Shown here one piece after another: positions 8,377-36,812 of a DNA stretch of 64,000 bases. Numbering within the stretch: position 1 is the first letter of the stretch; every line of letters starts with the position of its first letter. Both the position numbers and the translations under genes were made by a program. Where the stretch lies: assembly GCA_009103225.1 (NCBI GenBank), contig RHPI01003116.1, positions 173,356 through 237,355 on the forward strand, written 5' to 3'. Source of the stretch: Chlorokybus atmophyticus. Lineage: Eukaryota > Plantae > Mesostigma and Chlorokybus algae. The notes below the pieces were generated by a model, which worked only from the letters and a program-made list of their open reading frames with translations, was not told the DNA's origin and made no database searches.

Positions 8377-11325
8377 CTATTCTGTCTTTTTGGACTCAGC
8401 TTCTGAGTCGCTTCTTGCTTTGGACTTATCATCATCGCCTGATGACTCATCAAACTCCAGCAACTATGCAGAGCGGTTGATTAGAACTCCGACCAGTTTT
8501 CAAGTGCACAGCAAAAGTGTTCAAGAAGTTGACGCGTATCGTCAAAGACCAATTGCACGAGAGCTTACCTGTTTCAACTCTCCGTTCTTCAGACAGTGCA
8601 CGGTGACAAACCCGATAACCCCCGGGACAATGTACAAAAGCGCGGGTTGCGCAGCCTGTAACAACAGTAACAACAAACCACCCATCAATTCAACCATTGC
8701 TAACTTTACTAACAAAGACTGTCCTGTTGACCAAAAGTACAATGCCCGATGGTGTCAGCTCTCCTTACTGTACGGTTAAAAGCTGTGCTTGCATACAGTT
8801 ACACATAACTCGAATGCTTACCTGGAAGATGTTCATCACCGCGATGGTCGTGCCAAGCCCCGCAGCGTAGCCAGCGAATGCAGAGTAGAAGTAATGTCGC
8901 CTGCCCTTGCTGGCAATATCATACCTCAACACCAACGCAACGAAAATGCCTGCATATAACACAGGTATAACACGAGTTGAAAAAGGTAGCTTGAATCACA
9001 CAGCAAGCACAGTTTAGGCTGATATCTGGAACCAACTTCCGTTTATGTCCCAACCGAAGGCGAGGTGATCAAACCGGTGCAAAGCAGCAGAGTGGATGCA
9101 CGACACGGACTACACAATCACGCACATGCACGCGTGTGCATGCTCATGTATCCATGGATGAACAAGAATTGCATTAGTGAGAAGATACCTGGTATGACAA
9201 TATCGCCCAGGCCCAGCATGGAGAACGGTCGCGTGGCATCCGCGCTGACGGTCGGGAACAGGAGCTTGATCGGTGCGTCGAAGGACTTGGCCACGGACAC
9301 CATCACGGGCGTGCAGAACACCCAGAAGACATCATACACGAACAGCCCGCACAGCAGGATGCACCCGATCTTGAAGCTCCCTAGCGAAAGAAACTCAATG
9401 CCCTGAACGCAATGCGCCATGTTGGTTTGCACGCATAATGTTGAGCAAGTCATCCCTTGCGAAAGCACGTGCATGTGAGTGCGTGCTCGTATATGTGTGC
9501 GTGTGCGTAGTTGTGTGCACATGTGTGGTACCTGTATTGAGAATGCGAGGCCGAGTGTGTTGTTGGCGAGCCAGTGCTTGGCTTGGTAGTACCACAAGCA
9601 GAACATCAAGCTGAGAGCGCCCGCTATCGCCTGAGGGCCTGTCAGCTCTATCTCTAGTGGTTCTGCAGAACAATGTGTGACGCATAAATAAACATGTGAC
9701 ACGTAATGAGGTACATCTGCACAACAGGCGAGGTAGACAAGCATTGCCAACTAAATGCTTCCTGAGTTGGCAAGCAAGTGTGGACGGTGCACATCGGTTC
9801 ATACAATGGGGTATACAATGGAATAACAACAGTTGCTCACCCATACTACAGCACAAGTAACTCTTTTACACAAGGAGTTATGCTCACACAAGCAAAAAGA
9901 TTTACCTTTGCTCACGTAAGGTAATTGGAGTCGCCATGGCCCCAGCACACGGTTTCTCAGGGAGGCAGGCATTGCGGGAGCTAATAGAGGACTTAGCGTG
10001 GCCCTGAGTGAGCAGTTACACATCGTTGGTGCACATGAAAAGAACACAAGAAAAAGATGCCAAGCCATTCGTGTCAAAGACATACACACAAACCTGAACT
10101 TACGTCAGAGCTAAGATGCCAAGGAAGACAAAGTAGGCGGTAAGGACGGCGTTGACCAGCTCCTTGGGCACAAACTTGAAGAGCAGGAACAGCGAGAACA
10201 GCACGGCGCTTCCAATGAACGGGAAACGCATCGCGTCGTGTTGGGACATCGTTTCCTGCAAACAAGCACCGTACAGGTTGCTTGTCAAGTGCAACCAATT
10301 GTGTGCATTCTTAACCGTTTTGGGGTCACAGAATGCGGGTACACTGCACATGATGTGACCATCCTGCAGTAATGTGCTTTTATACAGCAGTTGCTTCATG
10401 CAATTGGCTGAAATGTCAACCAGCTAGAGACGATACTATCCAGATACCATGCAATACTATGCCGAGACATTGTGGCTTGACATGAAGTGCACAGGATCAG
10501 AATAGCACATGCGCCTGCTTGCTCAAAACTTACTTACAAAAATCCTGTAACTTGGCCACGTGTACTAGTGTAGCCATGTGTGCTTACATGTGCATAACAT
10601 GTGTTATGTCTGTCTGCATGCATCCCAACTGGGAAAACACACCCTGCAAGGTACTAACAGACGCTGCAAGATTGCCATTTCCAACATGTGCATACCGTTG
10701 GCGCTGTCAACTTGACGGATCTGTGCGCGCCAATGTAGACGGTCAGGCAGGCGGTGACCACAATGTTGATGTTGCTGTTGACCGGAACCACGAGCGGTGC
10801 TGCTGCCACAACTGTTGCAACACCCAACAGTTAACCTTACAGTTCCTGCATCTGAAGCCTATGCTGACTGAATTTCTACCATTGCTGTGTATTTTTTCAA
10901 ATAGAGCTGACTTTGAACTGATCATTTGCACGCATTGCCAAACAGCAGTGAAAAACTATGCCATGTGCACAGCGACATAGTGCCCAACCAATCCAAGCAA
11001 TTCAAAACAACCTTTTTTCGTGTGTCAAACAATTGAAGCCAAGAATTACAAAGCGCATTGCCCTGTGTTACAACCAATGTGACGCCAAACGTGCTTGCTG
11101 TCAATGTGTATGCCGTCGGACAGCCTAACCACCACTAAGTAAGGTAAGAAGATGAATAGGCAACTGTGCTTAGTAGATGTACATTGACGCAGTGAATGGT
11201 GTCCTAATGTAATGGGATGCAATGAAGACAGAAATTAGGTTTGCCAATGCACTAAAACCGCGCTTGCTGCTTGGGTACAACTCACCCGCTAGCAGCAGCT
11301 GCTCCCAAGCCATGGGGTAAACCAT
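8377..11325 (-). CDS. SPP: Signal peptide peptidase (GxGD intramembrane aspartyl protease)
   Basis: Exons give APLVVPVNSNINIVVTACLTVY|ETMSQHDAMRFP...|KHWLANNTLG|GIEFLSLGSF...LFVYDVFWVF...MLGLGDIVIPG|...QPALLYIVP, with the YD, LGLGD and PAL motifs and an ER-retrieval KKTE* end. Confidence 0.95.
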
Positions 11326-12183: not shown

Positions 12184-14673
12184 ATGGATGGCGGTGCAAG
12201 CCAAGTAAATGAAGCCACCCTGGCGCTATTCTTACAAATCACAGGGGCAGACTTAGCACAGGGGCGCAACATCCTTGAGGTAGGTTAAGTTGTGACTCCA
12301 TAATCACCACAACAGCAACAACAACCGATATTCAACCAACCACTGCGCGCGCATACATGGGCGGTTATCAAGAGATCACTTCATTGCGCTTCGCAAGTGA
12401 ACCTTGTAGTTTATGGCCGAGTGCATGTACAGCTTCAACACAACACATGATGTGAATTAATTTTACTTCACCCTTGGCTCACAGGCGGCCAATTGGCAGC
12501 TGGAATCTGCTGTCAACTTGTTTTACATCAACGCAGCAGATGGCGGTGGACCAACAGCTGGTGTCGCAACATCCACAACTTCCAGTGAGCCCCAAACGGT
12601 GCCAACGTACGTGCAGCTACTTGTCTTGTAGTGCACATGTGTGTTTGTTGATGTTACCCGCATGCCAACGTCATTCTGTTCTGATCAGCTCGCGCGAAGA
12701 GTTTGTGAGAGCACCCATCCCAGCAAAGCGTGAAGTACTCTACCAAGAAGAGTACTTGGCTCCAAGGTACTGCGTGCATAATATTTGTTCAAACCACAAA
12801 ATACGTTGCCAACTGTGCATCTCTTACCTATCTACACCATGTTCCTCGTCGCTCGACTACTGCCACCATGTATGTTAAACATCCACAGCTGTATTGGTGG
12901 TTCATTGTGGCAACATCCCTAATGAATGCTTTCTCTGCAGTTTTCGTGCATCAGCATCTGCGCCACAGGTCACTGTGGATGCATTCAGAGATTTCAGGGC
13001 GGAGCAAAATGGTGCTGCTAGTGCTGATGGCAGCGCGGAGGCCAAAGGGCTCGCTGCGCTGTTCAAACCACCCACAGAGATTCTGTTTGCAGGCAATTTT
13101 GAACAGGTGCATTTGACATCTGTCTATGCCTGAACATGTGGGCATGTCATCTTAGCTGACTTACTAACTGAAGCCGGTATCTGTCGGACATGCGGGTATT
13201 CCATTGCAGGCGAAAGCAAAAGCCGTGGAACTTGACCGATGGCTCCTTGTGAATATCCAGTCCGTAAACGAGTTCGCCAGCCATCTCGTGAGCATAGTCA
13301 TTGCATGCATTGTTGCACAGTCGACAATCTCCATCCTAGCTGATTCCTGTTAGTGGGCTTGAATATAGGAACTTACGAGTTGGCCTGTGCCTCATGTTTG
13401 CAGCTTAACAGAGATACATGGTCGCACTCCGCTTTGAAGAACATCATTAGTTCATCATTTGTATTCTGGCAGGTATATACACCTACTCATCCCCTTCCAA
13501 CAGTGTCTACTCTGTGCCTCACTTTTTGTGTATGCCATGTTGGACATCAGAGGGATCAGAGCTCTGAGGAAGGCGCAAAGTTGTCAACGTTCTATCGCAT
13601 CACTAACACCCCCGTCACGATGGTCGTGGATCCCGTCACAGGACGCAAGCTGCGGATGTGGGAAGGTGTTGTGGAACCAGAGCGCTTGCTAGAGGTTGGT
13701 AGGATCATGACATCTAACGCATGCGTGCCAACCCTATCAGGCAGTCGCTTGCTCTTGACTTGTCTACTTAGTGTTGAGTTTCTCCCCAGTGGATTTGTGC
13801 AAGCGCACGCTGGACATGGTCCATCATGGTCTGCTGTGTTTCATTGTCACTGGTTGTTGTGCCGCTGAGACAGCTCGATCTGCTTGCAACATTTTCAGCA
13901 ATGCAGTCGTTTCTGCAGGATATGGTGCAGTACCTTGATCATGGGCCTATGAAGAACCCGAAGCGGTTCAAGGATGGTTCCATCCCGCCACCGCGCGTAC
14001 AGGCAACAACAACTGCCTCTACTCCTGCTCTTGCGTCCAGCAGCAAAGCTCTTAGCGAAGACGAGGAGCTTGCACTTGCACTAGCTGCCAGCATGGAAGG
14101 CGCAAGCGGCTCAGCACCCGCCCCCATTGCAGGTAGGAAACAATGCAGATGAGTCAGTATTACATTGCCCACACGCGCGCATGCGTACGCACGCACATGC
14201 TCGTGACTTGATACCATTCCTGGCATGCAGAGAGCCCGCCAAGCGTAGACCCTGAGGAGCTGCGCAGACAACAGGCTGCGGCGCTAGGCGAGGAGCCGAG
14301 CGCCTCGGACGCCAACGCGTGCACCATTGCTGTTCGGTTACCTGACGGCCAACGCGTCCGAAGACGGTTTCTCAAGGCCCGACCTTTGCAGGTAACTCGA
14401 CATTACAAGCACAGAACACTCATCTTCTAAACAGTTATCTGGTGAATGGCCACTGGTGGTACGGTGTGAGTACTTATCTTTACTGTTCACTTTCTGTTGT
14501 GTGTGCAGGAGTTGGGGACATATTGCCGCTCGCTTACAGCGGATGCAGCTGCGGGCCGAGCGTTTCGTTTAGCTCCATCCGTGCCGGGGTTAGCGCCGTT
14601 GGATCTGAATAGCAACCAGTCGCTGGATGTCGCAGGGGTGGCTGGCTCGATGTTGGTCATGAGCTGGGCGTAA
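12184..14673 (+). CDS. PUX7: Plant UBX domain-containing protein 7-like (UBA-like, UAS/thioredoxin-like, UIM, UBX); CDC48 adaptor
   Basis: Exons give MDGGASQVNEATLALFLQITGA...|AANWQLESAVNLF; VRAPIPAKREVLY; LAALFKPP; WLLVNIQSVNEFASHL|LNRDTW; DPVTGRKL; EDEELALALAASM; IAVRLPDGQRVRRRF; and end AGVAGSMLVMSWA*. Confidence 0.9.
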
Positions 14674-17652: not shown

Positions 17653-18630
17653 ATGCAGAGAAAGGCCCTGCGTCAGGTTCAGGGGCGGCGGAGGGCAAGG
17701 GCAAGGGCAAGGGCAAGAGTAAAGGCAAGGGCCGAGGCAAGGGGAAGGCTTGAGCGCCTGAGACATATAAACTCTACATGTATAAGGTGTGCTGTTTTGC
17801 ATGCACGCTGTGGTTTTTTCGTGTCATATGTGTGGATGCATGTCCCGTCCAGCAAGTTGAGCTGTCCCGTCATGCTTATGCATGCAAGCCAGAGGGCATA
17901 CCTAGGGTTGGAAGTTGATGCTGAATTAACTAAGAAGCTACAGCCTTATCGAAATCATAGTCAGGCTATGCATTATCATAAGTTGACTTTGCGGCTGTGG
18001 ACTGCAGGTGCTGAAGTTGGTAGCAACCAACGCTAAGTACTGAATCTTAAGAACTCAATTGTACAATGTGATCGTGTCTCGGCAACTCTTCTGTGTGCAC
18101 ACAGTGTCACTCTGTATCTGCATACAGCGACATGCTGTCAAGTAGTTAAGTACCAACGTCATGTTTTACAATGACCGGCAGTGCCTACCGACTAAACAGT
18201 CTCCTGCCAGCTTGCAAAACCAATTGGTTTGCACGGGCTGCAGCCCCTTCGTTGCAACAATGGCACCATACCTCGTGCAACCGTATATATGCATGATCGT
18301 TTGGTGGATAAGTGCTGTGTGATGAGTGTTGGTCATCATAATGGATAGGTGTTGGGTGTAAACTCCATTACTGAGTCATGGTCCCCATCAACTGCAAGTT
18401 TTAAAGCAAGTGCACCCCGACACGGGCATCAGCAGCAAGGCAATGAGCATCATAAACAGCTTCATCAATGGAAGCTGGCGACAGATAAGTTCCGCTTTGC
18501 GCGCTACAACTAGAAGCCCACAATTTCCTTGCGCGAGATCCAGACAGCTGTCCGCCTCATCCTTCCTGGCGAGCTCGCCACGCACGCCGTCTCTGAGGGA
18601 ACTCAAGCTGCCAAGTTCACCACAGCTTGA
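17653..18630 (+). pseudogene. H2B: Histone H2B pseudogene (short Lys/Gly tail, one intron)
   Basis: Reads ...GKGKA*APETYKLYMYK|[24 protein letters not shown], then a 10-nt deletion (frameshift), EKLATD...[38 protein letters not shown]. There are two in-frame stops and a frameshift, plus a probable -1 just after the ATG. Confidence 0.9.
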
Positions 18631-20490: not shown

Positions 20491-21286
20491 GTGCAAGGAT
20501 TGGTGTGCATGGCGAGAGTAAGCCCCATTGAGTTGGTGGGTTGTCTCCCCACTGGCGCACATCTCTGTGCTATGGCGAGCTACTGCACGGGAGCCTCAAG
20601 TCGCGACCCGAGACCCTGACTGCAGGTCCTGCCCTTACGGGATGGCACTTTCTGCCTCATCGCCCGGGGACTTTCTCTCGGTCATCGAGATAACCGTATG
20701 CGCCTTTCACCATGCACAAAAACTGCAATATGCCCGCACTTAGCATTCCATACCCAATTGCATCGATGCAATGCGCAACAGCTGGTGCGGTGTAAGCCGT
20801 CAAGGTGCGCATCTGACGGTCAGTAATAACTGATGTCAGGCAGGTGTCTCTGGCTGCGGCCCGAGTCATGCGGCATGACAGGCCCTCAGGTCCATGGAGG
20901 CAGCCGCAGGCGCGGGTTTTCACCTCAGGTTGGCCAGCCGATCTCTCCACTCACCCTCTGAGCATGCACGCAAGCAGTGGCAGTGCAAAGCAGCGAAAAG
21001 CAGGCACAACTTGTGCCGCACAAGGCTGCCATAGCGTGCTTGCCCTGCCCCGTTGCCGTTGCTCAAAAGAGGCTGTTGCATTTGTTTGCGCCTACGTCAC
21101 ATTGCAAGCTGTCACTGCAGCTGAGAGCCCTCAGCTTGCCTTGAGCTCTCAACGCCAGCTGGCCTTGAGGTTGCCAAGCCTGGAGCAGGGCGTCGCAAGG
21201 GAAGGAGTAGCAAGTGATAGAAGAGCGGTGAGGCTGCTCACAAGGCTTGTTTACTGCAGTTTGCTTGCTTAGCTGGTTGTTTGGTT

Positions 21287-22593
21287 ATGGGCAACATGGA
21301 TGCGGAGGGGGCGCCCACGTCGGATGAGCTGCCTGGAGGTGAGGAACCAGAAGAAGGATCACCAGGAGGTGGAGCTGCGGAGGAGGAGGAGGAGGAGGAG
21401 CATAGGGAAGCTGAGGCCGAGCATGAGCACGAGGAGCACATGGAGCATGCCGCACCAGCCGGCGGCTCGCCTCCGCCTGCGGCCGGCCGGCAGGGGCCAG
21501 GCAGGGCGGAGAAGAAGCCTCCGGCGCAGCCGCATGGCAGGAGGTCGGCCAAGCGGCGGCCAGGCCGGCCGGCGGGGAAGTCCAGGAGGCAGGAAGGCGG
21601 CGAGGGGGAGGGCGGCGCCAGCAGAGGCCGCCCTAACCGCCGCCACGTCAAAGCCGAGACTTGGAAAATCTACATCTACAAGGCCAGTCAGACTGCAAGC
21701 CGCGTATACTGCAGCAAGTGCGTGTGTTGGTACACTGTTTGCATGTAGCCGCTGCATGTGACACATGCAGCGGCTACAAAAGATGTTGGCCTGACGTGCA
21801 TGCATCGCATTCACAACTTCGGCAACCAGGCCCTAATCAGTGCATGCTTGCAGGCAAAGGGCCGCTTTTTACTTATAGTTCAAGCCAAAGCTTAGCTTTT
21901 GTAAGCATGCACGCAACTTGGGACTGTCTACACTGTCTACACTGTCCTCAGCTAGTGGTACTCACGACATAAACTGCTACCTCGCTAGTCGTTAAGCCTA
22001 TTGACAACAGACCGTAGCTGTGAAGCTGCTAGCAGTAATGCAGCTGCGGTCAGCCTATGTGCGATAGTCGCACTCTGGAAGTGGTGGGCCCCGCTACGTA
22101 CAAACAGAGTGAGGGTCACAAGCAGCGTGTATTTCGTGGCACAGCGGTGAATGCTTGTGGCTGCCAGCAAGCAACATATGCCTGGTGACTTGGGCCAAAA
22201 AATGCTTTCAAATTTCAGGTGCTGAAGCAGGTGCACCCAGACATGGGCATCAGTAGCAAGGCGATGAGCATCATGAACAGCTTCATCAACGACATGTTCG
22301 AGAAGATCGCCACGGAGGCCTCGCGCCTTGCTCGCTACACCCACAAGAACACTCTCACGTCCCGCGAGATTCAGACCGCAGTCAGGCTTATCCTTCCAGG
22401 CAAGCAAGATGAATTACTTTCAGTCTAAACATCAACATCTCCTCTCGTGTGTGACTTTACACTAGCATAATATAAAGACTGTGTTGATACTGTAGTACTG
22501 TCTTCATACTTACGTGCAAATGCAGGTGAACTGGCCAAGCATGCGGTGTCTGAAGGCACAAAGGCGGTGACCAAATTTACATCTTCAGCATGA
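21287..22593 (+). CDS. H2B: Histone H2B variant with a ~130 aa acidic/His-rich then basic N-terminal extension; 3 coding exons
   Basis: [15 protein letters not shown]...[20 protein letters not shown]...[11 protein letters not shown]...[11 protein letters not shown]|[14 protein letters not shown]...RLILP|[22 protein letters not shown]. The frame is open through both introns, which use GC donors. Confidence 0.9.
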
Positions 22594-23281
22594 TGATGCA
22601 CCCAACCAGTGCGGTACACGACCTGTACTGCGTTGTTGTAACAATAAGCGAGCTTTCTTGTACAGCGCGTGAGTTGTATACAGAACAGTAAGATGTGCTG
22701 CCTGTTGTTTTGCAATGCAATAAAACTTGTTGTGCCTCATCTTGCGTAGGGGACATGGTGATCACTGTACACATCGAACATGGCGGCACTGCACGCCACA
22801 ACAGCCATATTCCCACGCACAATCGTATACACACGGCAACAGTCAGATTGTTGCCAACGCAACAGACTGTTGCCATTGCAAGAGAACACACTCAGAAACC
22901 GCACAATTATGTGGAACAATGCACAAAGTACAGGTACTGCAAGCTGCAACCACGAATGCGGTGGTTGATAAATGTAATGTTACATCGCGCGCTATACGTC
23001 TGTTACCCAACTATAGGAAAGGTCATCAGACGCTATGTACTGTCAAGTACTGTCTTCTCTACAGACAGGCATTTGCCTGTCATCTACAAAGCAAGCTGGC
23101 AAGAAGGAAGGAGAGGAAGCACATGGTGCTTCCTCTTGTCCTTCCCGCACAGCTTGGCAAAAGAATGAGCAAAAGAATGCGCAAAAGAATAAGCCACTCC
23201 TAACTAACTCCAACTTGCTTTCCCACTAACAATGTTCTAGTCTACGCGAAGCATAAAAACCTTTTGTTACTTTCCTTTTGT

Positions 23282-26200
23282 TCAGCTCCAAGTCGTGTGC
23301 AAATTGTCCACCTGGCTGAGTGCCAGTGTCTGTTGGTCGCCGGCGGTGGCGGCGGGGCCGGCGGTGATGGCACCGGGAAGGGCCAGGAGTGGGGAGGCCG
23401 GGTTGGAGGCGTAGAGCTTATGCCACGTGGCGCCGTTGGGGCTGTACTCCGCCGTGACTACTGTCGTCGTTACGCTCAAGCGCAGCCACACCGGGAAGGT
23501 GCTGGCGACTGGGCCTGCAAGGATAATGAGGCTAGGGTTAGGGTTTGTGTGGTGGGACGGACGTGTGCACTTGTGTATGTATGCTTGTTTTGCATAGAGT
23601 CAGTGTTGTATGCGTTTGCTGCTAAGCTGCAACGTTTGTTGCAAGCTGGTTTGGATTGCTATGCTGCTCAATGGAGCTGTCAGCTGCGACCAATCGTGTG
23701 TCACATATTGGAACACTGTTGTGCAAAAGTTTCTGAATGCCTTTGGTATAACCCTGCGACTGGTGCGTGCGTGCGTGCGTGCTGCGTGAAGTGACAGCCA
23801 AGCAGTACTTAAACTGATGTGAGCAGTCAACTGTGGTGAGTGGTATGTGACAGGAAGGGATGACTGTGCACCGTAGTAAAGCATTGACACAAACTGTGCG
23901 CATGCACACGTGCTCACAATGAAGTGTAGGAGAGTGACATGCATGCGCACTCACCGGCAAGGTTGGCGATTCTGGTGCCATAGACGCTGCGCACGTCCAG
24001 CTCAATGCTGCCGTCAGCGTTGGTGAAGAGGAAAGCTGCAGGGGCACGCGAGAGCCCAGGCGAGCCCAGACGCACCATCAGACCCGCTTTGCCCGTGGTG
24101 CCCCGGGAGAGCGACAGCACGCGAGCACTCATGGTTAGGCTGGAGGCGCGGAACTGAGAAGTAGAGCAAACAGGGTGAGATGAAGGGCATGTGGCGTGAC
24201 TTGTGTACATGCTTGTGTGCAGATGTGCACGCCAGTGCGTGCGTGCGTGTGTGCGCAAGCACGTGTGTACGTGTATGTGTGTGTATGTGCTCGCATGCAT
24301 GTTCGCATACTGATTGGTAGACGAAGTTGAACTGGTCGACGGTGCCACGGACGTCAAGCCCGCCTGATGTCATTGTGTATTTGCCGTTCAAGTAGTATGC
24401 GCCACCTGGCAACACGCCCGTGTATGTGTCCGCGCCTATATCAGCTTGCGCAAACCCGCTGGGCAGCGCTCCTAAGCGTAGCAGTGTTGGTATAGTTCCT
24501 GTATCAAAGTGCATGCACACACACGCACATCCTAAACTCAGGCACCAACCTGTGCCAGCAGCTGGCATTGCAATTGTATAGTAGGCTGTGTAAGCCGTTG
24601 AGCTGGCTTTCACCAGTTGCGTGCTCGGGCCAGCATTTGACCAGCCTGATTGAGTTGACCGCAGATAGAATGGTTGCTCAACGCGCCAGTGAATGAATGC
24701 CAGCATAAATACCAGTGTGTGTGACTTACCCGCAAAGTTCATCTTCATGCCGCTCCATGTGGCGGTTGCGGGCGCGACCAAACGTACCATGGATCCATCC
24801 GCTGCTTGTGTGGTCATTGTGCCGGATGAGGTCGTCAACTGTCAAAAAGGACTTGAGTGAGTACTGTTATGACAGGAGCCACTGGTGCAGGTATTGTGAT
24901 GTGTTCGTGCACGCACGCCCGTGCACATGTGTGTGCACCTTTGCCCATGCAATTGTGCGTTACCTTGCTATTGGCGCCCACTCCAGCAATTGCAACTGGC
25001 GCGGTGATCACTTTGAAGGTGAGCATGTGGACCGGAGGTGCGGAGTACCTGGCAACCACTTCGGTGGCGGGTCCCACCGCAGCACCTGAGGTTGTAGAAT
25101 CATGCAGTAAGCCAACCTGCATCTTCATGTACAAGTACATTGGTTGCATCCAGGAACCGAGCTTACGTGTGGGCCATGCGATCGGCTGCGTGTTCCATGT
25201 TGGGATGCCGTCAACCCTTGCAACTGTCGGAAGCGAGAAGCGGAACCACCGTGCCTTCACTGCGTCACCAGCGTTGTCCACCAAAACACTGAAGGTGATT
25301 TCCCACGTGCTTGAAGCCGGCTCAAAGTCAGCCTGAAAAGCAACAGCGGCTCGTCATCAGGATTATGCGCAAGTGCTGGATGTGTGCACATGTGCGTGCA
25401 CGTATGTTGTGTGTGCCCCCACATGCGTTGCACACAATGCACACACACGCGCGCGTACATGCATGTGCTTGCATATGTACGTGCATGTGTACTCAGTTTT
25501 TGCCAACAAGCTACTGCCACACACAAGTGAATACAGCTTGATACCACTGTGTGCTCTCTCTGTACCTGCCAGAAGTCCTTGCCATTGACAGCCTGGTCCA
25601 CAACAGCCCAGTTTATCCCATCATAGCTCATCTCCAGCTTTGGGTCCTTGAAGCCCGTCACACCCGCAAAGGTCATTGCAAGGTGGCTCAGTCCGCCGGT
25701 AACCGAGAATTGGGCTCGGTTAGCACCGTCAACCTGGTTGTGGATGAACAAAGGTCAGTTTATGCCTGCGGTGCAGTCGAGCAAGTATGTGCATCTTTTG
25801 AGTTTGAACCTACCTGAATCATAAGCGGGCGATCGCGCAGCATTTTGCCTGTCGTGATGATAAATGTGGGCGTGTTGAGCGCGACCTCCCGGTACATCAT
25901 GCGCCAGCTGTTCTCCCACTTGAGCAGCGCGGCTTGCATGTTGGCGTTGGGGCCGTAGTAGTCCACTTTGTACTTGGGCAGGATTACCTGCTCGATGATG
26001 CAATCGACGTAGTCGCCGGCCTTGAGAGACGTCACCGAGGACGGCGGGACCACCTCGATAATGGACACGGCCAAGTTGGGTGCGTCTGTGCCGTATGACT
26101 TGATCCCGCGCTCTGCGGCACAACCGACACACAGAGGGTGAGTACACGTACACACGAGCTTGTATGAAATGCACAAGAACTTGTTACAGACCTGCCAAGA

Positions 26201-29200
26201 ATGGGTTGGTAGGATTCCCGTTGAGCACTGCATTCCATTTTGAGATAGAGAACCCGCGCGAGGCGTCGGTAGCGCCCTTGCCCGCAGCGCCAGGGCCCTG
26301 TTGCGTTGGATTGTCACACAATGTGTGGGTCAGGCTCTTTTGCGTCCCACAACAACTATATGGTTTATACTTTGTTGGCTTTGTCGTACCTGAGTGAAAG
26401 ACACCCAATTCTTCCTTCCCTTCATCTCATAAAATGGTGTCCGGTATGCGTCTTTCCCGTTCACTGCGTGTGATGCAACATGTTTGTCCAAGTCATGCAG
26501 TAATGTGTAGCTTGTGTATGTTGCGATTATTATCACTGTCATCATTGCTTGTTGGAATGCCAAGGCACTGCACCTTGGCCAAGTAGGCTGTTCCACTCAA
26601 GGGCAAGTCCAGTCTCATCACCATACACGAAGTGGGTGCTGTATCCGTAACTATAAGCCTCAGCCGACATCTGCAAAATAGAGTGCAACAGTTGAGCTGT
26701 TGTCATCATGTTGGGCATTGTGCACGAGTGTGCGCATGTTTGCATGTGTACAGGCATACGTGGGAGCATACAGGTGGCGAGATGGTCACTCAACCAACCT
26801 GCCAGATGGGGAAGCGAACGAATGTCATGTCGGAGAGCACGTCAATGCGCAGGTGGTAAACGGCCCTTGCAGCGTCATCAGAGCGCGCGATTGAAGCGGT
26901 GTATTGAATCTTCATCATGTTGTCTTGGGACTTGCCCGCATATGTTGTCTGCAGGTAACGGGTTGTCGGTCTTAAGTCACTCTCAAGTGGCTGTTTGTGT
27001 GTGCATGCGTGTGCCCGCAAGTGCATGTGTACATGTATGCACCTCTGCCTGCGTGTGTCTCATACGCTTTTTCAATGTTTGCTTTGACTCACCTCTGTCA
27101 AGAGAGGTCCCTGTCGTTTGCGGTAGGTTTTCATCTCCACGTTGTACACGCGGTCTGTCGAGCCCGTATCGATGGCGTTGAAGTCGCCTCCTCCTACATT
27201 TGTCGTCCAACCAAACTGCTCCCTCTTGGCCTGACGTTGTTCGCACAAGGTCAGTTTCACATCCACGAGCTAACTTGGTGATGCACCTTGAGTGGTCACT
27301 CACCCCGTTGCCAAGCACGTATAGTGGCCGCATGTCGAGGACTGCCGCCCTCACGTTGCGACCCTGATCAGGCTCGTAGCAGAAGGTTTCAGCCCAGGCT
27401 CTGTGCAAGAGGCACCGTGAGTCTACGCACATGCGGTTTTTAATTCTATCCACATGCACGCACACACGCGCGCACTCATACATGCGCACGAGGTGGCCTT
27501 CAGGCATGACGATATATGCCATTGCACTGTGTTGCAGAGTTGTGATATGCGTCGTCATGAACAACACATACGAGATGGCGGCTTGGTCCCACTGAGTGTT
27601 GGGCTGATATGTGAGAGCCAGCTGCACGTGTGAGGCGGCGGGCGCCCCGCCCCAGAAGGCGTTCAGTGTCGTGTACACCATCGACCACGACGCCCCCGCT
27701 GGCACTGCCATCGCCACCATACCCCTGAACCACTTCGGGTTTGAATCCCAGTTCTTGGACACCTGTAAGAACCAGTCAAGTTACAATCAAGTGAGACAAG
27801 TGTGACATGCACGCAGACACAAGCACAGGCACAAGTGAATAGAAAGGCAACCAAGCGCACATGTACTCGCACACCTACATGCGCACGCACGACTACACCC
27901 ACACTCATGCATATCCACACACGTACACATGAACAGTGCACCTATGCACTAACATAGTGAGTACTGGGACCATCATGTTCATACTTGGATGGGGATGCCG
28001 ATGGGGTTGAGTTGGGTGTCGTGCAGGGTGGCGAGAATGCCCGGGATGAGGAAGACAGTGCCAATCTTGGAGAAGGAGAGCCTCGCGATGCGTGTGCTCG
28101 CGCTCGGGTTCGACACGGTCACCGTAACGCGCTCAATGCGGTTCCACCTCTGGTCTCCCAGCGGTTGTTGCCTGTTAAGCAAGGGGAGAACTAACCGTGA
28201 ACTCCTGTTCAATTCACCGTGTGGAGTCAGTGCATTGACCGAGTTATGTCGTTGGCTTACGCGTCGTTGCGCAGAGCAATGTCGTGCCAGCCTTGCTCTT
28301 CAACGTATTGCACGGGAAGGTTGGGGACAACCATCGGCATCGTCTGTAGCGATGGAACCACGCAAGGGTTACTTGAATCGAATGCTAGTCTCAGCGTCCG
28401 CCTTTGTTTGCATTTCAGCTTAGCAGCAGCATACCTGGTCAGCAGCAACCGTAATGGGCGTGCGCAGATTTGTCAAACCGCGCTCGGCATCGTTGAAGTA
28501 CGCCACCAAGGTAACCGTGCGCTTGGTCAACGGGAGCCAACTGGACGCGCATACAACCCAACTTAGTCAACCCATTCCAACCCAATCCAACCCAACAATG
28601 GACACAACATGCAACCCAACATGCAGCACAACACCCACGTGCTGGGGTTGCTGATCGCTTCATTGCCATTGGCAACCGAGGCCCCGGTCGACGCTGCAAT
28701 GGTGAAATCAGAGCCGAGTCCCGCTGCGCTCAGCTTCACATATATGCGAGCGGTGGAGAAGTCCCTAGTTTGCGGGGTCACGGACAACGTGAAGGCCACG
28801 CGGTCCGGCCAGACGGATACCTCAATGGAGGACTTGATCGGAGGTGTGCCGCCTGCGTGCACGTAACACGTGTAAGCGTAAGAGAGAGTTTGTGCATGTG
28901 CCTGTGCGCGCGCGTGCGTGCACAGGCAGCTTGATTGGACCACGTGAAAAGCGGGAGTTGACCAACAAGCATATTCACATGCAAGTTGACACAATGTCTG
29001 TCCCGCAACGTGTACGTGATTCACTCACTTGACCATATGAGTGAGTCGAACAGGCGGCGATTGAACCAGCGCCCGTGTTCGACAAGCTTGGCATTCTGCA
29101 CAAAGCTGCAATAATACAACAGTAAGGTGACTATCAGGATGTCGCACCTGAAAGTAGGCTGCGTGTACCCAAAGTTGATACTTACTTGCCAGACGTGCCG

Positions 29201-30064
29201 GTGGCTGTGTACACCACATTGTTGTAGTTCAACCCAAAAGTAATGGTCGCATCACCGGGCAGCCCGCTCTCAATCATCTCATTGCCAAGGTTCAGTGCGT
29301 AGGCCTCTGCGTGCGGTAGAGACACATGTTAGTCCTCAACCAACACAACAACCCAACATGTGCTTTGCTTCTCAGTCAACTCACCGGACACGCGGCGGGT
29401 GAGCTTCCCGAAGGTGAGCATTTTCAGCGTGTTGTAACTGAGTTCGAAGCCGTAGCGGCTGGTTTGCACCGCCACCATCAAGTTGGTGGGATCACGCAGC
29501 CCGTTCTTCCAGTACATGTAGGAGTAGTCTGCCACTGTCCCCACAGCCGTGTCGGGGATGGTGGAGATTGCCTCTAATGTTGTTGTTGCTGCGTTTGTGC
29601 GCATGCCACTGGTACCCTCTGGCAATAGAGTGTCCGGCTGCGGACTGTTCATCACACGCACACGCAATCAGAGTGTCATTGAATGCAGGTGCGTGGTACT
29701 GCAGCACCGATTGGCTCGCTGCATGCATGGCTTATGCGCTTGTGTGTCATGGTAAATGACAAGCGCATAAGCAACTGTGCGCGGTCAAGTGCAAGTGCCA
29801 TACTCACGGTGAGTGAGTGAGCGTGTGCGTGTGCGTGTGCGCTCAGTGCTAAATGGATGAGTGCACATTCGCAGGTGAAGTGCACTTGTGTGAGATTGGT
29901 GTGTGCACGTACTCGCGGAGGACTTCGGCGGCGCTGAGGTCCATTTTGAAGGCATCGGAGGGCTCGTAGCTGGAGAGATCTTGTTGTTGTGCGCTGGCCG
30001 GGAGTGAGAGGGTGAAAAGAAGCAGGAGGGAGACAACAGCTGCGAGAGCGTGTACGCGCGCCAT
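23282..30064 (-). CDS. Large secreted protein (~24 exons): signal peptide, bacterial-type domain of unknown function, C-terminal ConA-like (DUF1349-type) domain; copy A
   Basis: N-terminus MARVHALAAVVSLLLLFTLSLPASAQQQ. Central motifs GIPIQ|VSKNW, WGGAPAASHVQL, WTTNVGGGDF, QAVNGKDFWQ|ADFEP..WEITF. C-terminus ADIG...GGLDVRGTVDQFNFVYQ...ARV...KAGLMVR...VWLRL...AEYSPNGATW...VDNL. Confidence 0.8.
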
Positions 30065-30123
30065 AGCTATAACACAATATGTGCTCTTGAGAGGAGAGTG
30101 CGATGTTTGAATAGATATATGTA

Positions 30124-30220
30124 TTGAAGGCTTGTAATGGAGCCTTCAGATGAACTGAATGGTACAGAAGAATGTGTTGAAGGCTTGTAATGGAGCCTTC
30201 AGTTGAAAAGAATGGTACAG
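30124..30220. repeat. Two ~53-bp tandem units, each holding the inverted repeat TGAAGGCT-N8-AGCCTTCA, just upstream of the secreted-protein ATG (also at ~44412-44510)
   Basis: Direct inspection of the sequence. Confidence 0.8.
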
Positions 30221-31513
30221 ATGATTGGTTGTGTCGTTGCCAGTCTGCCAACACAACAGGAATGTGTCAGACAGGAAAGACTGAAAACAACAACAGCAAC
30301 AGAACCATCACAACCAGCAACCAACACAGCAGTAGCAGCAGCAGTCATTCTCTCAAGTATGCCAGTACTCAACCAGCCAAGCCTAATTGACAGAACCAAG
30401 AGCAAATTGAACACTCACCTCAGTTGACAGTAGTACAGAGAGCAACGTTAGGCAGCAGCAGAATGCAGCTGCGCCTGCAACAACACCACAACACGTCTAA
30501 CTGCTCTCCAATACGTAATACTAGCGCTGAGCTTTACACCAGCACAGCGAACAGCGGCATGCACTGCCGCCGCCTTATGAGGCCGCCGCCAATGTGGCGC
30601 GGGTGTGCTTGTGTGTGGATGTGTGTGTGACTCCGTCCTTGTGTACTCTTACCTCGGAGTCACAAAGCACACCCGTGCCGTGCCTTTACGATAACCCAAA
30701 ATGACGGCTGTTTATTAATACGCCGTTGACGGGCGGCTATAAGCGAGCACCATACGCTTAATCTCCCGCCGGAAAGTTGAATACCTCCAAAAGTTTTCGA
30801 GGCGGTAGGGCCAATGTTTGGCAACGCTTCGTTCCCATCAATTTTTCCGAGGACTTCCGTCATTGGAAAGGTAGGCTCCGTAGTGTTGAACGATAAGCAC
30901 TGCGGAAACGGTTTCCTGAAAATGGTCGTTGGGTGGATCGACAATTGACAAACTCTCACCCTGTACGGATTACTGTCTCCAGCATGTACAGCAGCGCCAG
31001 ATATGACGGGCACTTGTCTCAGGTGGCTGCCAGCTTGCCATCTGTGGAATCTATCTGCGACAACGAATATTTACACGACGCAGCGCAGTTGCATCTGATG
31101 GCTGACGCGACATCTCAACCTAATTCGGAAGTGGTCAACCAAATCATCTGACACTGTAGCAACAGCAAATTCAACAGCTTGCACACAGAGCAAGCTGGCA
31201 ATGCGCTTGCATGATTGGTACGCTGCTGACAAACACAGCCATTGACGTTGCAGCACCGTTCAATGACTGCCTTGTTAATTGCATGTAAGAGACTGTAAGC
31301 AACTTAATGGCGCCATCGGCTTGTCATTAACAGTCAATTTGGCTATTTGCCTTGTGGCCCAATACCATCACATGACAGGACAGATTTACTGCATTTTAAT
31401 ACAAGGAAAGCGAGCTGTAGTTTTGTTTTTTTGCAATGTATTTTACTGTATATGTTATTGTATCGTATACGTCGTACTTTACCTCGTCAGGTACCCCCCT
31501 CATCCCCCCCCAC

Positions 31514-31734
31514 NNNNNNNNNNNNNNNNNNNNNNNNNNNNNNNNNNNNNNNNNNNNNNNNNNNNNNNNNNNNNNNNNNNNNNNNNNNNNNNNNNNNNNN
31601 NNNNNNNNNNNNNNNNNNNNNNNNNNNNNNNNNNNNNNNNNNNNNNNNNNNNNNNNNNNNNNNNNNNNNNNNNNNNNNNNNNNNNNNNNNNNNNNNNNNN
31701 NNNNNNNNNNNNNNNNNNNNNNNNNNNNNNNNNN
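31514..31734. other. Assembly gap (N run)
   Basis: N run flanked by poly-C tracts. Confidence 0.99.
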
Positions 31735-32270
31735 CCCACCCGTCCGCTATAGTCCAATCCCCTTAAGTTTGAGGGTATGCAGCCAACAGACAACTACCAA
31801 TATAGTGTGCACGACCGCAACGTGATAATGCAAATACATTATAATTTGTTACGAAACAAGATGATATGATGATTGGGATGCAATTATGTAAATTCACATT
31901 AACTTTATGATTGAGCACAATGGTATAAAAATTGATGTTGCAAATGCGCAAGTAAAGATTGTACACTCACAACCACAGAGAGAACCGGGTGGTCCTGCTT
32001 ACACAGCTAGTCTACAAGTGAAACTGTATGCAGGGTAGAGTGTTTGCGCTCCACTGTCTGTCTTGACGCTGCTACCACTCACCACACTAGTGCTTGTGTG
32101 CGCACTATGTGATGACGGTGATAACGAATGCAGGTGTATCCCTAGATACCGACTGCACTATTTGATGCAGAATGCAACACACTCACTTGAGCAAAGAGGG
32201 TGACACTGTGAGTAAACAAGCCACTGCGATATGTAGTGCTGTATATACAGTTCTTTGCATGTGGCAAGAA

Positions 32271-32780: not shown

Positions 32781-33448
32781 GCATGAGTGGATGACGTCTT
32801 ACACTGTTAAGTGAGGTGAATAAACAAGCAACCCAGAGATGCTATGTCCTGACTGATGCAGCAAACACACCATTGCCAAGCTCACAGCAATGACAAGCAC
32901 AGCGCACAATAAAGTAAAGCAGTCCTTGGCAACCGGGACAGTGTGCTTCCAGTTCAAGTCGCTTCACAAGCTCTTAAAGTCAGAGTCTTTACTCTTAGTA
33001 CTCACTCACAGTGTCACTAGCGAGTCTAGTGACATAACTTCGTACTTATACATGTCAAATCACGACTGTGCAGTGCCATGCGGGCACTAGGCCAACGGTC
33101 ACATCGAGGCCGTATGCTACTGCGGAAATCCCCTAAGACTCGATATAGCACACGAGCTGATAACAGATTCCCAACTGATCAGCGACGCGCAGTTCCTATA
33201 GAGAAGTCTATAGAGTAGCCCTACTTACATGCTACATGAAGTACGAAGTAGCTAGCAGTAGGCTGGGGCGCGCGCGGTCTTCATGCTGGTAGCCCGGGCT
33301 TGTGGCTGGATGTAGGCATGCTCGAGGAGGACTGGCATACGAGGGTATTTGGCATGACAATATCGTCGCCGTTGGTACAATAACCTGTTAATTCAGTCAA
33401 CGTGACGCGCGCGTGACCAGTCACGTTCTCACGTGACTTTTCATTTTT

Positions 33449-34884: not shown

Positions 34885-35467
34885 TATACTATGATATAGA
34901 GCATGCGATAAGTCACAATATATATCGTGCGAATATACGATATATACGATGTAAGCCGCCAATAAGCGCATCTGACGGCTGTCGCCGTCAAAAACTCAAC
35001 TGATACAACACCTGAGGTGAGACGGTGTCTCTGGCCCATGCGGCATGACAGGCCCTGAGGTCGTTGAGGCAGTCGCAGACGCGGGTTTTCACCTCAGGTC
35101 GGCCAGCCTGTCTCTCCTCTCACGCTCTGAGCATGCACGCAAGCAGTGGCAGTGCAAAGCAGCGGAAGGCAGGCACAAGGCTGCCATAGCATGCTTGCCC
35201 TGCCGTTGCCGTTGCTGAAAAGAGGCTGTTGCTTCTTGCGCCTCAAGTCAGATTGCAAGCCGTCACTGCAGCCGAGAGTCTTCAGCTTGCGTTGAAAGTT
35301 GAAAGCAAGCTGGCTTCAGGGCTGCCATGCCTGGAGCAGGGTGGAGCAGGAGGCGCAAGGGAAGGAGCAGCAGAAACGAGCAGGAGCTGGAGCAACAGCA
35401 GAAGAGCGGTAAGGCTGCGTACAAGGCTTGCTTACTTCAATCTGCTTGCTTAGTTGGCTGCTTGATT

Positions 35468-36812
35468 ATGGGCAACATGGATGCGGAGGGGGCGCCCACG
35501 TCAGATGAGCTGCCTGGAGGTGAGGAACAGAAGAAGGATCACCAGGCAGAGGAGCTGCGGAGGAGGACCACGGGCATGATGAGGAGGAGCATGAAGATGC
35601 CGAGGCGGAGCACGAGCACAAGGAAGAGCCATGGAGTACGCCGCCGCAACAGCGGGCTCTTCTCCTCCGCCTGCTGCCTGCCGGCAGGGGCCATGCAGGG
35701 CGGAGAAGAATCCTCCGGCGCAGCCGCCTGGCAGGAGGTCGGCCAAGCGGCGGCCGGCGGGGAAATCCAGGAGGCAGGAAGGCGGTGAGGGGGAGGGTGG
35801 CGCCAGCAGAGGCCACCCCAACCGCCGTAACGTCAAAGCCGCGACCTGGAAAATCTACATCTACAAGGCAAGTCAGACTGCAACTTGAACAGGCGTACAC
35901 TGCAACAAGAGCATGTGTTGACACACTGTAGGCTTGTAGCCGCTGCATTTGCCACATGCACAAAAGATGTTGGCCTAACGTGCGTGCATTGTGTTCACAT
36001 CTTTGGCAACTAGGTGCATGCTTGCGGCCAGAGGACCGCTCTTTACTTATGCTTTGAGCCAAAGCCTAACGTTTGTAAGAATGCACGCAACTTGCAACTG
36101 TCTACACTGTCCTCAGGTAGTGGTACTCACAGCATAAACTATCACAAGTCGGGAAGCCTGTTGACAACAAACCGTAGCTGTAAAGCAGCAGCATTCTGTC
36201 TTGCAGCTGCGGTCAGTCTGCGTATGGTAGTCGCACTCTGGCAATGGTGGGCCCCGCTAGATACAAATCAGCAACAGAGTCAGGGCCCCTCTGACCGTCA
36301 CCAGGACGTGTATTGAGCAGCACAGCGGTGCATGTTTGTGGCTACCAGCGCAGAGTAGAGCAAGAGCAGACCTCAGCACCAGCAGAAAGATGTTGCTGCA
36401 GGTGCTGAAGCATGCATTTTGCAAGGCATTGTAAAGCAAGCAATATGCCTGGTGACTGGGCCAATATGCTTTCTCTTTTGTGCAGGTGCTCAAGCAGGTG
36501 CACCCAGACATGGGCATCAGCAGCAAGGCGATGAGCATCATGAACAGCTTCATCAACGACATGTTCGAGAAGATCGCCACGGAGGCCTCGCGCCTTGCTC
36601 GCTACACCCACAAGAACACCCTCACGTTCCGCGAGATTCAGACCGCAGTCAGGCTTATCCTTCCTGGCAAGCATCATGATGATGTACTACTTTCAATCTC
36701 AAAAACACAACACTAGCATATTATACCGACTTTCTTGATACTGTACTAGTGTCTTCCAACCTGCGTGTAATTGGCCAAGCATGCGGTGACGAAATTAACA
36801 TCTTCAGCATGA
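35468..36812 (+). pseudogene. H2B: Disabled copy of the long-tailed H2B variant
   Basis: Two frameshifts in exon 1 relative to copy A (GAACCAGAA to GAACAGAA, and a second just before ATG 35631). The exon-3 acceptor is lost, there is a 21-nt deletion of SEGTKAV, and S to F occurs in TSRE. Confidence 0.8.

What the first reader, a model, noticed from the sequence alone, without database searches (positions are those of the whole stretch)
21287..22593. Novel histone H2B variant with a long bipolar disordered tail
132 residues precede the first intron: a strongly acidic Glu/His block ([20 protein letters not shown]), a Pro/Gly linker and an Arg-rich block, followed by an intact histone fold with variant substitutions (ETWKIY, PDMG, YTHKNTL). 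Canonical H2B tails are short and Lys-rich. Seed-plant H2B.8/H2B.S is a known precedent for an H2B whose long IDR condenses chromatin. This could be an independently evolved algal analogue (gamete, resting-stage or condensate-forming histone). Introns imply a polyadenylated, replication-independent transcript. The start codon is uncertain, since a possible upstream exon ends near 21227.
Basis: partly seen in the sequence, partly recalled or inferred. Interest (0 to 1): 0.8.

Follow-up and report, generated by a model that had tools for sequence, protein, structure and literature searches.

The report
Histone H2B variant with bipolar tail
An intact three-exon gene of the streptophyte alga Chlorokybus encodes a nearly normal histone H2B core behind a 123-residue tail (half strongly acidic, half arginine-rich) that has no relative in public data and has evolved under purifying selection, but nothing yet shows that it is expressed.

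Summary
At 21287-22593 (+) three exons encode 132 + 60 + 22 residues. The core is an H2B histone fold (Pfam 4.6e-17; PDB H2B about 1e-26). The 123-residue tail has an acidic Glu/His block (net -20), a Pro/Gly/Ala linker and an Arg-rich block (net +13).

- The genome is Chlorokybus atmophyticus. The locus already has a public model (Chlat1 8248, 208 aa) with the same start codon. That model adds seven residues inside helix alpha1 and reads through intron 2, so it lacks helix alphaC.
- Both introns need GC donors to give a canonical H2B.
- A decayed paralogue lies 14.2 kb downstream. Against it, the tail shows dN/dS 0.28, 23 of 38 substitutions at third codon positions, and 59 of 60 identical bases in the first 20 codons (5' flank 80%). 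So the acidic block is coding, not leader.
- The tail has no homologue in 1.84 billion representatives, in JGI metagenomes or in the word index.
- The only read evidence is two low-depth unspliced contigs. Expression and splicing remain unshown.

It is not H2B.8/H2B.S, though H2B.8's disordered region is also acidic. I class it as a lineage-specific new variant of a known kind. The scan holds no other note on it.

The parts
20965..21286 (+). ATG-free leader and promoter-proximal region before the start codon
   Evidence: No ATG in 322 nt, where 4.7 are expected from composition. It is 80-87% identical to copy B, with indels. The transcription start was not mapped.
21287..21682 (+). Exon 1: 132 codons, made of the 123-residue tail plus the start of helix alpha1 (ETWKIYIYK)
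   Evidence: Translation. dN/dS against copy B is 0.28, and substitutions by codon position 1/2/3 are 10/5/23 (p = 0.001). Same start codon as public model P0121.
21287..21439 (+). Acidic Glu/His block, residues 1-51 (19 E, 2 D, 4 H, net -20), including a (GAG)7 run
   Evidence: The first 20 codons match copy B at 59 of 60 bases (P = 2.6e-5 at the flank's divergence rate). Residues 21-51 give dN/dS 0.23. Copy B still reads as a Glu/His block in a shifted frame. AF2 predicts a low-confidence helix at residues 31-52.
21440..21499 (+). Pro/Gly/Ala linker, residues 52-71, net charge 0; begins with the alternative in-frame Met52
21500..21655 (+). Arg-rich basic block, residues 72-123 (12 R, 5 K, net +13), colinear with the whole canonical plant/algal H2B tail (AEKKP..., EGG, basic run before ETY/W)
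   Evidence: The colinearity is visual only; BLAST is significant only for the alpha1 start.
21683..22218 (+). Intron 1 (536 nt), GC-AG: AAG|GCCAGT ... TTTCAG|G. An alternative GT donor at 21704 (CGC|GTATAC) is used by the public model and would insert ASQTASR into alpha1
   Evidence: Copy B has the better GC donor AAG|GCAAGT and an in-frame TGA before the GT donor. Intron 1 is 79% identical between the copies.
22219..22399 (+). Exon 2: 60 codons plus 1 nt, covering the rest of alpha1, L1, alpha2, L2 and alpha3 of H2B
   Evidence: Pfam Histone 4.6e-17. PDB H2B chains about 1e-26. 97% identical to copy B, dN/dS 0.06.
22400..22525 (+). Intron 2 (126 nt), GC-AG: CAG|GCAAGC ... TGCAG|G, phase 1
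   Evidence: This is the only junction that joins exon 2 in frame to the perfectly canonical alphaC of exon 3. The public model reads through it to a stop. 70% identical to copy B.
22526..22593 (+). Exon 3: [22 protein letters not shown]-stop. Carries helix alphaC with both H2B acidic-patch glutamates and the lysine at the ubiquitination position
   Evidence: Identical to the C-termini of the canonical H2Bs fetched.
22594..22660 (+). Probable 3' UTR with a TGTAA at 22637. An exact X1 contig ends at 22660
   Evidence: No Rfam histone 3' stem-loop hit. The poly(A) site is inferred, not shown.
35468..36810 (+). Paralogue B of the same gene (public model Chlat1 8250, 80 aa), now broken
   Evidence: The damage: a 1-nt deletion after codon 20; a second frame shift before the Met52 equivalent; Ser to Phe in TSREIQ; loss of the intron 2 acceptor; and a 21-nt deletion in exon 3.

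Best explanation
This is a functional, lineage-specific replacement-type histone H2B of Chlorokybus atmophyticus, about 214 residues after removal of two GC-AG introns.

Shown: the core is close to canonical and keeps alpha1-alpha3, alphaC, the acidic-patch glutamates and the C-terminal lysine.

Inferred: it should pair with H2A and enter ordinary nucleosomes.

Shown: the tail has three parts.
- The proximal 52 residues carry the same net charge as the ancestral H2B tail and appear colinear with it, but most lysines are replaced by arginine.
- A 20-residue Pro/Gly/Ala linker follows.
- The distal 51 residues are a Glu/His polyanion (net -20) with no counterpart in other H2Bs.

Inferred mechanism: the Arg-rich part holds DNA where the tail exits between the gyres and cannot be switched by lysine acetylation. 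The tethered polyanion projects from the nucleosome. There it either folds back on the basic tail or binds basic tails or linker histone of neighbouring nucleosomes. Either way it changes inter-nucleosome electrostatics, so it could drive self-association of the kind seen with the acidic disordered region of angiosperm H2B.8.

Inferred from the lack of transcript evidence: expression is probably stage- or condition-restricted.
For: Gene and core:
- Pfam Histone and PDB H2B matches.
- Exon 3 encodes a perfect alphaC that can be reached only through the GC donor.
- All three exons are intact.

The tail is translated and constrained:
- dN/dS is 0.28 (Fisher p = 8e-4 for synonymous against nonsynonymous).
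- Substitutions favour third codon positions, 23/10/5 (p = 0.001), with no such periodicity in the intron or upstream controls.
- Tail dS (0.24) is about equal to intron divergence.
- The first 20 codons match at 59 of 60 bases, against 80% in the 5' flank.
- The leader is ATG-free and the context is G at -3 and G at +4.
- The public model uses the same start.

Copy B kept the Glu/His character before it broke. So the long-tailed form was maintained in two copies for part of their divergence: nonsynonymous changes number 19.5, against about 31 expected if B had always been neutral.

Charge architecture.

Disorder: AF2 gives no confident fold in the tail (pLDDT 48-65), with only a low-confidence helix over the Glu/His block.

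The tail is an orphan.

Precedent: the acidic disordered region of H2B.8 drives salt-independent chromatin phase separation regardless of exact sequence (PMC9668745).
Against: - No spliced transcript or peptide was seen. In run X1 the only exact contigs (22002-22224 and 22441-22660, depth about 4) cross both acceptor sites unspliced, and exon 1 has no exact contig. These could be genomic DNA, pre-mRNA or retained introns.
- No transcript-derived protein of this variant is in the 5.8-billion collection. The cluster holds only the two gene models.
- Two GC donors in one gene is unusual. A crude motif count found no excess of AGGCAAG in this window (13 found, 10 expected), whereas AGGTAAG is enriched (12 found, 4 expected).
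- The sister copy has decayed, so the family may be on its way out.
- The selection test rests on one paralogue pair, 38 substitutions and an alignment through low-complexity sequence.
- The mechanism is inferred from charge pattern and analogy only.
Confidence: 0.55

Rival explanations
1. The gene is intact but silent. It is a recently retired duplicate that will decay like copy B, and the constraint measured reflects past rather than present function.
For: No spliced RNA was seen, only unspliced low-depth contigs. The protein collection holds no transcript-derived protein. The neighbouring duplicate unit has lost both its H2B copy and its RNase MRP copies.
Against: Copy A has no lesion in 645 coding bases. 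Both GC donors, both acceptors and the start codon are intact. Exon 3 is still perfectly canonical, whereas copy B's exon 3 has deletions. The runs available were few and of uncertain type.
Confidence: 0.17
2. The true product is the public model or something close to it. It would use the GT donor at 21704, so seven extra residues (ASQTASR) sit inside alpha1, and/or retain intron 2, which truncates the protein after ILPG and removes alphaC.
For: Public model P0121. The GT donor is in frame. AF2 runs a continuous helix through the insertion, at low confidence. X1 contig 22441-22660 contains the 3' part of intron 2 joined to exon 3.
Against: CGC|GTATAC matches the usual donor consensus only at +3, whereas AAG|GCCAGT matches it at six of seven flanking positions. 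Copy B has a TGA before the GT donor and an even better GC donor. Exon 3 would not have stayed 21 of 21 canonical if it were unused. The public model looks like the output of a predictor that does not allow GC donors; that last point is my inference.
Confidence: 0.12
3. Translation starts at Met52 (21440). The protein would then be an ordinary-length H2B (about 163 residues) with an Arg-rich tail, and the acidic block would be 5' leader.
For: Met52 is in frame, and the resulting tail length would match plant H2Bs. The transcription start is unmapped. Several frames are open here by composition alone.
Against: Codons 1-20 match copy B at 59 of 60 bases, and the one change is synonymous. Codons 21-51 give dN/dS 0.23, with 10 of 15 substitutions at third positions. 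The 322 nt upstream contain no ATG, and both ATG 21287 and ATG 21296 sit in good context. Copy B keeps a Glu/His reading in its shifted frame.
Confidence: 0.06
4. The tail works mainly by something other than chromatin electrostatics. The His/Glu block could bind metal (Zn, Ni or Cu), or the tail could be a docking or self-chaperoning segment for import or deposition.
For: Alternating His and Glu ([16 protein letters not shown]) is a typical metal-coordinating composition; this rests on my own knowledge and was not tested. The His residues are partly conserved in copy B.
Against: No family or motif match was found. Several His positions differ between the copies.
Confidence: 0.1

Closest known systems
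Canonical plant and green-algal H2B (for example P0231, P0233 and P0225 fetched here)
   Same: The fold, alphaC, the acidic-patch glutamates and the C-terminal TKFTSS lysine are the same. Exon 2 is 73-88% identical to H2Bs from many organisms. The basic part of the tail has the same net charge (+13 against +11 to +12) and a similar length and order of landmarks.
   Different: It has about 70 extra N-terminal residues, including a net -20 Glu/His block. The basic part is Arg-rich (12 R, 5 K) rather than Lys-rich (18-23 K, 0-2 R). Tyr becomes Trp before alpha1. Four changes fall in the stretch I take to be the DNA-contacting L2 loop (my own knowledge) (YNKKPTIT to YTHKNTLT), with PDMG and NDMF elsewhere in the fold. 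Two introns interrupt the fold.
Angiosperm H2B.8 / H2B.S (Arabidopsis HTB8)
   Same: Both are H2Bs with a greatly expanded N-terminal tail containing a negatively charged disordered segment. In H2B.8 that segment drives chromatin phase separation independently of its exact sequence (PMC9668745; PMC7410336).
   Different: There is no KVVxETV motif, no extended C-tail and no H2B.S-type core substitutions. The acidic part here is shorter, Glu/His/Gly/Ala-rich and strictly N-terminal. It is found in a different lineage (an early-diverging streptophyte alga), and the tail has no sequence homology to anything. This would be convergence at most.
Sperm-specific H2Bs of sea urchins and hydrozoans (SPKK-motif tails)
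   Same: Both are H2Bs with an extended N-terminus that alters chromatin packing (PMC9903204, listed).
   Different: Those extensions are basic SPK(K/R) repeats. This tail has none and carries an acidic block.
Public gene model Chlat1 8248 (Chrsp77S07675; EukProt EP00898 P008052)
   Same: Same locus and same start codon, with exon 1 through residue 132 and exon 2 identical.
   Different: The model uses the GT donor 21 nt downstream, which adds 7 residues in alpha1. It also misses intron 2, so it ends [12 protein letters not shown] and lacks alphaC.
Proteins with an acidic tail tethered to basic DNA-binding parts (for example HMGB1). This is a functional analogy from my own knowledge.
   Same: A polyanionic segment joined by a flexible linker to a basic nucleic-acid-binding segment, which allows intramolecular masking or binding in trans to histone tails.
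   Different: The family is unrelated, and nothing about it was tested here.

Membership tests
Histone H2B | Histone fold (alpha1-L1-alpha2-L2-alpha3) that scores as core histone and is closest to H2B | tested here: met
   Pfam PF00125 4.6e-17 on exon 2. The best PDB matches are all H2B at about 1e-26. The alpha1 start ETWKIYIYK is at the end of exon 1.
Histone H2B | H2B-specific C-terminal helix alphaC with the acidic-patch glutamates and the conserved C-terminal lysine (ubiquitination position) | tested here: met
   Exon 3 reads [21 protein letters not shown], identical to the canonical H2B C-termini. This requires the GC donor at 22400.
Histone H2B | Basic segment immediately before alpha1 | tested here: met
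   [12 protein letters not shown] precedes ETW. The basic block has net charge +13.
Histone H2B | Incorporation into nucleosomes with H2A | not testable with these tools
   Needs reconstitution or ChIP.
H2B.S / H2B.8 (angiosperm seed and sperm variant) | KVVxETV motif in an expanded N-terminal tail | tested here: not met
   A regex search found none. The motif definition is from PMC7410336.
H2B.S / H2B.8 (angiosperm seed and sperm variant) | Slightly extended C-terminal tail and clade-specific core substitutions | tested here: not met
   The C-terminus is canonical plus one Ala. The core is near-canonical.
H2B.S / H2B.8 (angiosperm seed and sperm variant) | Disordered tail segment that drives chromatin phase separation | not testable with these tools
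   A negatively charged, low-confidence (pLDDT 48-65) tail segment is present. Its behaviour is untested.
Sperm H2B with SPKK repeats | Repeated SPK(K/R) motifs in the N-terminal extension | tested here: not met
   No SP[KR][KR] match.
Replication-independent (replacement) histone variant | Expression outside S phase from an intron-containing, polyadenylated transcript | tested here: inconclusive
   Two introns are present. There is no Rfam histone 3' stem-loop hit, and a TGTAA lies at 22637. No usable RNA evidence was obtained.

The most novel reading that the evidence does not exclude
Chlorokybus has independently evolved an H2B with a tethered polyanionic tail that acts like angiosperm H2B.8, driving reversible, transcription-compatible chromatin self-association. 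It would be used in a particular life stage such as zoospores or desiccation-tolerant cells. It may pair with the acidic-tailed H2A variant that other agents reported elsewhere in this genome, as part of a lineage-specific set of long-tailed histones.
Probability: 0.15. Interest if true: 0.7.

Novelty: new variant of a known kind. Interest (0 to 1): 0.45.

Why it matters
H2B variants are the least explored of the core-histone variants. The one well-understood long-tailed plant case, H2B.8, works through an acidic disordered segment.

A second, unrelated H2B with a tethered polyanion in one of the earliest-diverging streptophyte lineages would be a natural test of the idea that tail charge architecture, rather than tail sequence, tunes chromatin compaction. 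The near-complete Lys-to-Arg swap in the basic half also gives a natural H2B tail that cannot be acetylated.

In practical terms, the public Chlorokybus model of this gene is wrong in two places because both introns use GC donors. Other genes of this genome may be mis-modelled in the same way.

Tried and rejected
- Word-index search with exon 1: no hit. This was partly a blind spot, because the public model is a non-representative member of a cluster headed by an 80-aa protein.
- Word search with residues 70-208 of P0121: 8000 H2Bs. The top of the list was tandem-H2B mis-annotations, and nothing shared the tail.
- HMMER of exon 1 against 1.84 billion representatives: 0 hits.
- JGI metagenome loci scan: 597 pattern matches, none confirmed.
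- ESM Atlas with the tail: no usable hit.
- Exact look-up of P0121 on contigs: not on record.
- Reads: one stretch of 2,101 letters was laid on three runs of one 2021 study. The run type is only guessed as RNA, there were no joints, and there were two unspliced exact contigs. The high-depth contigs over exon 2 belong to canonical H2B genes, with 3-6 mismatches.
- Motif count as a proxy for frequent GC donors in this genome: inconclusive.
- Upstream exon ending at 21227: rejected.
- Plant histone 'hexamer' ACGTCA at about 21094: present in copy A but not conserved in copy B, so I give it no weight.
- A full upstream exon for the pseudogene at 18392: none found.
- Literature: no paper mentions Chlorokybus together with H2B in a relevant way, or with GC-AG.
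- The joined three-exon protein was never typed, searched or folded as one sequence. Exons were used by reference, and public model P0121 stood in for a full-length protein.

Full report
**What is there.**
The + strand at 21287-22593 holds three exons.
- Exon 1 (21287-21682) gives 132 residues.
- Exon 2 (22219-22399) gives 60 residues plus one base.
- Exon 3 (22526-22593) completes a Gly codon and adds [21 protein letters not shown] and a stop.

Exon 2 scores as a core histone (Pfam PF00125, 4.6e-17), and its best solved relatives are all H2B at about 1e-26. Exon 1 ends with ETWKIYIYK, the start of H2B helix alpha1. Exon 2 begins VLKQVHPD, so the K|V junction reproduces a canonical alpha1 exactly.

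**Organism and prior annotation.**
The exon 2 search returned an 80-aa EukProt/JGI protein of Chlorokybus atmophyticus (Chlat1 8250), 97% identical. Its cluster holds a second member, Chlat1 8248 (Chrsp77S07675, 208 aa, P0121), which is the public model of this very locus. It uses the same ATG at 21287 and contains the whole acidic and basic tail.
- It splices from a GT donor at 21704, which puts ASQTASR inside alpha1.
- It reads through intron 2 to a stop (…[12 protein letters not shown]), so it lacks alphaC.

The protein is therefore already in a public proteome, mis-modelled. I found no paper discussing it.

**The introns.**
Both introns that give a canonical H2B have GC donors: AAG|GCCAGT for intron 1 and CAG|GCAAGC for intron 2. 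Both acceptors are CAG|G.

For intron 2 there is no alternative. Exon 3 encodes 21 residues identical to canonical H2B C-termini, in a frame reachable only from that donor.

For intron 1 the GT donor 21 nt downstream (CGC|GTATAC) is also in frame, but three things count against it:
- It fits the usual donor consensus poorly.
- It would disturb alpha1.
- In the paralogue it is preceded by an in-frame TGA, while the paralogue's GC donor is the textbook AAG|GCAAGT.

Eight first-reader notes claim that GC-AG introns are frequent in this genome. My crude check in this window was inconclusive: AGGCAAG occurs 13 times against 10 expected, while AGGTAAG occurs 12 times against 4 expected.

**A paralogue gives a selection test.**
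The window contains a tandem segmental duplication, about 20501-31976 against 34536-47059. Copy B of the gene lies at 35468-36810. It is broken in several ways:
- a 1-nt deletion after codon 20;
- a second frame shift before the Met52 equivalent;
- Ser to Phe in the conserved TSREIQ;
- loss of the intron 2 acceptor;
- a 21-nt deletion in exon 3.

Identity between A and B, by segment:

| Segment | Identity |
|---|---|
| 5' flank | 80% |
| Codons 1-20 | 98% (59 of 60; the one change is synonymous) |
| Acidic block | 84% |
| Residues 52-132 | 90.6% |
| Intron 1 | 79% |
| Exon 2 | 97% |
| Intron 2 | 70% |

In the tail, substitutions fall 10/5/23 on codon positions 1/2/3 (chi-square p = 0.001). The intron and upstream controls show no such periodicity. 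By Nei-Gojobori, exon 1 has dS 0.24 (about the intron divergence), dN 0.069 and dN/dS 0.28 (Fisher p = 8e-4). Exon 2 has dN/dS 0.06. Residues 21-51 taken alone give 0.23.

In its shifted frame, copy B still reads as a Glu/His block (EEDHGHDEEEHEDAEAEHEHKEE).

If B had been neutral since the duplication, about 31 nonsynonymous changes would be expected. 19.5 are seen (P = 0.017). So the long-tailed form was kept by selection in both copies for part of their history.

Caveats: this rests on one pair, 38 substitutions and an alignment through low-complexity sequence.

**Start codon.**
No ATG occurs between 20965 and 21286, where 4.7 are expected. ATG 21287 has G at -3 and G at +4, and ATG 21296 is in frame in an equally good context. 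Together with the conservation of codons 1-20, this makes a start at Met52 (21440) unlikely.

An open frame alone would not have been evidence here, because four of six frames are open for more than 135 codons.

**The tail.**
- Residues 1-51: 19 Glu, 2 Asp, 4 His, net -20, including a (GAG)7 run.
- Residues 52-71: Pro/Gly/Ala linker, net 0.
- Residues 72-123: 12 Arg, 5 Lys, net +13.
- Only 5 of the 123 residues are hydrophobic, and the tail as a whole has net -7 and pI 5.5.

Canonical plant and algal tails fetched here have 18-23 Lys, 0-2 Arg and net +11 to +12.

The basic block lines up with the whole canonical tail (AEKKP near its start, EGG in the middle, a basic run before ETY/ETW). This is visual only, as BLAST is significant only for the alpha1 start. 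On this reading the gene is an ancestral H2B tail with Lys replaced by Arg, plus about 70 new N-terminal residues.

AlphaFold2 without an alignment, run on P0121, gives pLDDT 48-65 throughout the tail. It predicts only a low-confidence helix over residues 31-52, while the fold region reaches 71-78.

**No relatives of the tail.**
Searches of the word index, of 1.84 billion representatives with HMMER, of JGI metagenome contigs, of the ESM Atlas and of this scan's own index all found nothing. Cluster representatives can hide tails, as happened with P0121 itself, and low-complexity sequence is hard to match, so absence is not proven.

**Expression.**
One study of 2021 holds part of the stretch. 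Laying its three runs on the stretch gave no joints.
- In X1, two contigs identical to the window (22002-22224 and 22441-22660, depth about 4) run from intron into exon across both acceptors.
- Exon 1 has no exact contig.
- The deep contigs over exon 2 carry 3-6 mismatches and canonical residues (…NKKPTITS), so they come from canonical H2B genes.

The run type is only a guess. The contigs could be genomic DNA, pre-mRNA or retained introns. The protein collection holds no transcript-derived protein of this variant.

The 3' UTR has no Rfam histone stem-loop hit. It has a TGTAA at 22637, 23 nt before the end of the X1 contig, which is weakly suggestive of a poly(A) site.

**Comparison with known variants.**
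H2B.S/H2B.8 is defined by a KVVxETV motif, a slightly extended C-tail, core substitutions and an angiosperm clade (PMC7410336). None of these holds here, so this gene is not a member.

It may nevertheless work in a similar way. The H2B.8 disordered region is negatively charged. It can be scrambled or replaced by unrelated disordered regions of similar negative charge, and it drives salt-independent phase separation of nucleosome arrays (PMC9668745).

SPKK-type sperm H2Bs are excluded.

**Verdict.**
The gene is real, intact and constrained. Its tail is unusual and has no known relative. The gene is lineage-specific and has a dead sister copy. Its function and even its expression remain inferred. 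I class it as a new variant of a known kind and set interest at 0.45.

**Rule compliance.**
The joined spliced protein was not typed, searched or folded. Exons were used by reference, and public model P0121 stood in for a full-length protein.

Noticed in passing
window 20506-20717 (-): RNase MRP RNA gene (Rfam RF00030, 89.6 bits, full-length model match), 570 nt upstream of the H2B variant and divergent from it. Two 87%-identical copies at 33828-34045 and 34536-34755 do not reach the Rfam gathering score and look decayed.
   Followed up: partly
window 20501-31976 versus 34536-47059: Tandem segmental duplication of about 11.5 kb with mosaic identity: about 80% over the H2B gene but 96.7% over 22564-29841 against 36783-44099. 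This suggests gene conversion or a composite history. A small extra tandem lies at 33445-34156 against 34156-34885.
   Followed up: partly
window 18392-18627 (+): 5'-truncated H2B pseudogene of canonical type (YN*KPTIS, frameshift, no intron 2). Its homology starts exactly at VLKQ, the same point as exon 2 of the variant. It sits in a lower-GC stretch.
   Followed up: partly
window 21743-21779: Perfect palindrome (15-bp stem, 3-nt loop) inside intron 1. It gives a weak sub-threshold miRNA-model hit on both strands and is partly deleted in copy B.
   Followed up: no
window 36392-36430 (copy B intron 1): An 86-nt insertion in copy B's intron 1 contains a short duplicate of the acceptor plus the start of exon 2 (…CTGCAGGTGCTGAAGCA). 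The public 80-aa model (Chlat1 8250) starts at an ATG inside this insertion.
   Followed up: no
window 45600-47000: AT-rich block (GC 26% in 46001-48000) with ORFs of 340-430 codons open in five frames. This looks like low-complexity or repeat sequence and lies within copy B's stretch of the duplication, whose matches are interrupted there (45776-46821).
   Followed up: no
window 9121-9750 (-) and 13353-13865 (+): Ordinary host genes nearby: a signal peptide peptidase exon (PF04258, 2.9e-35) and a weak, sub-cutoff thioredoxin-like match (4.9e-05). The locus does not look like transposon cargo, unlike several histone H3-like genes reported elsewhere in this genome.
   Followed up: partly
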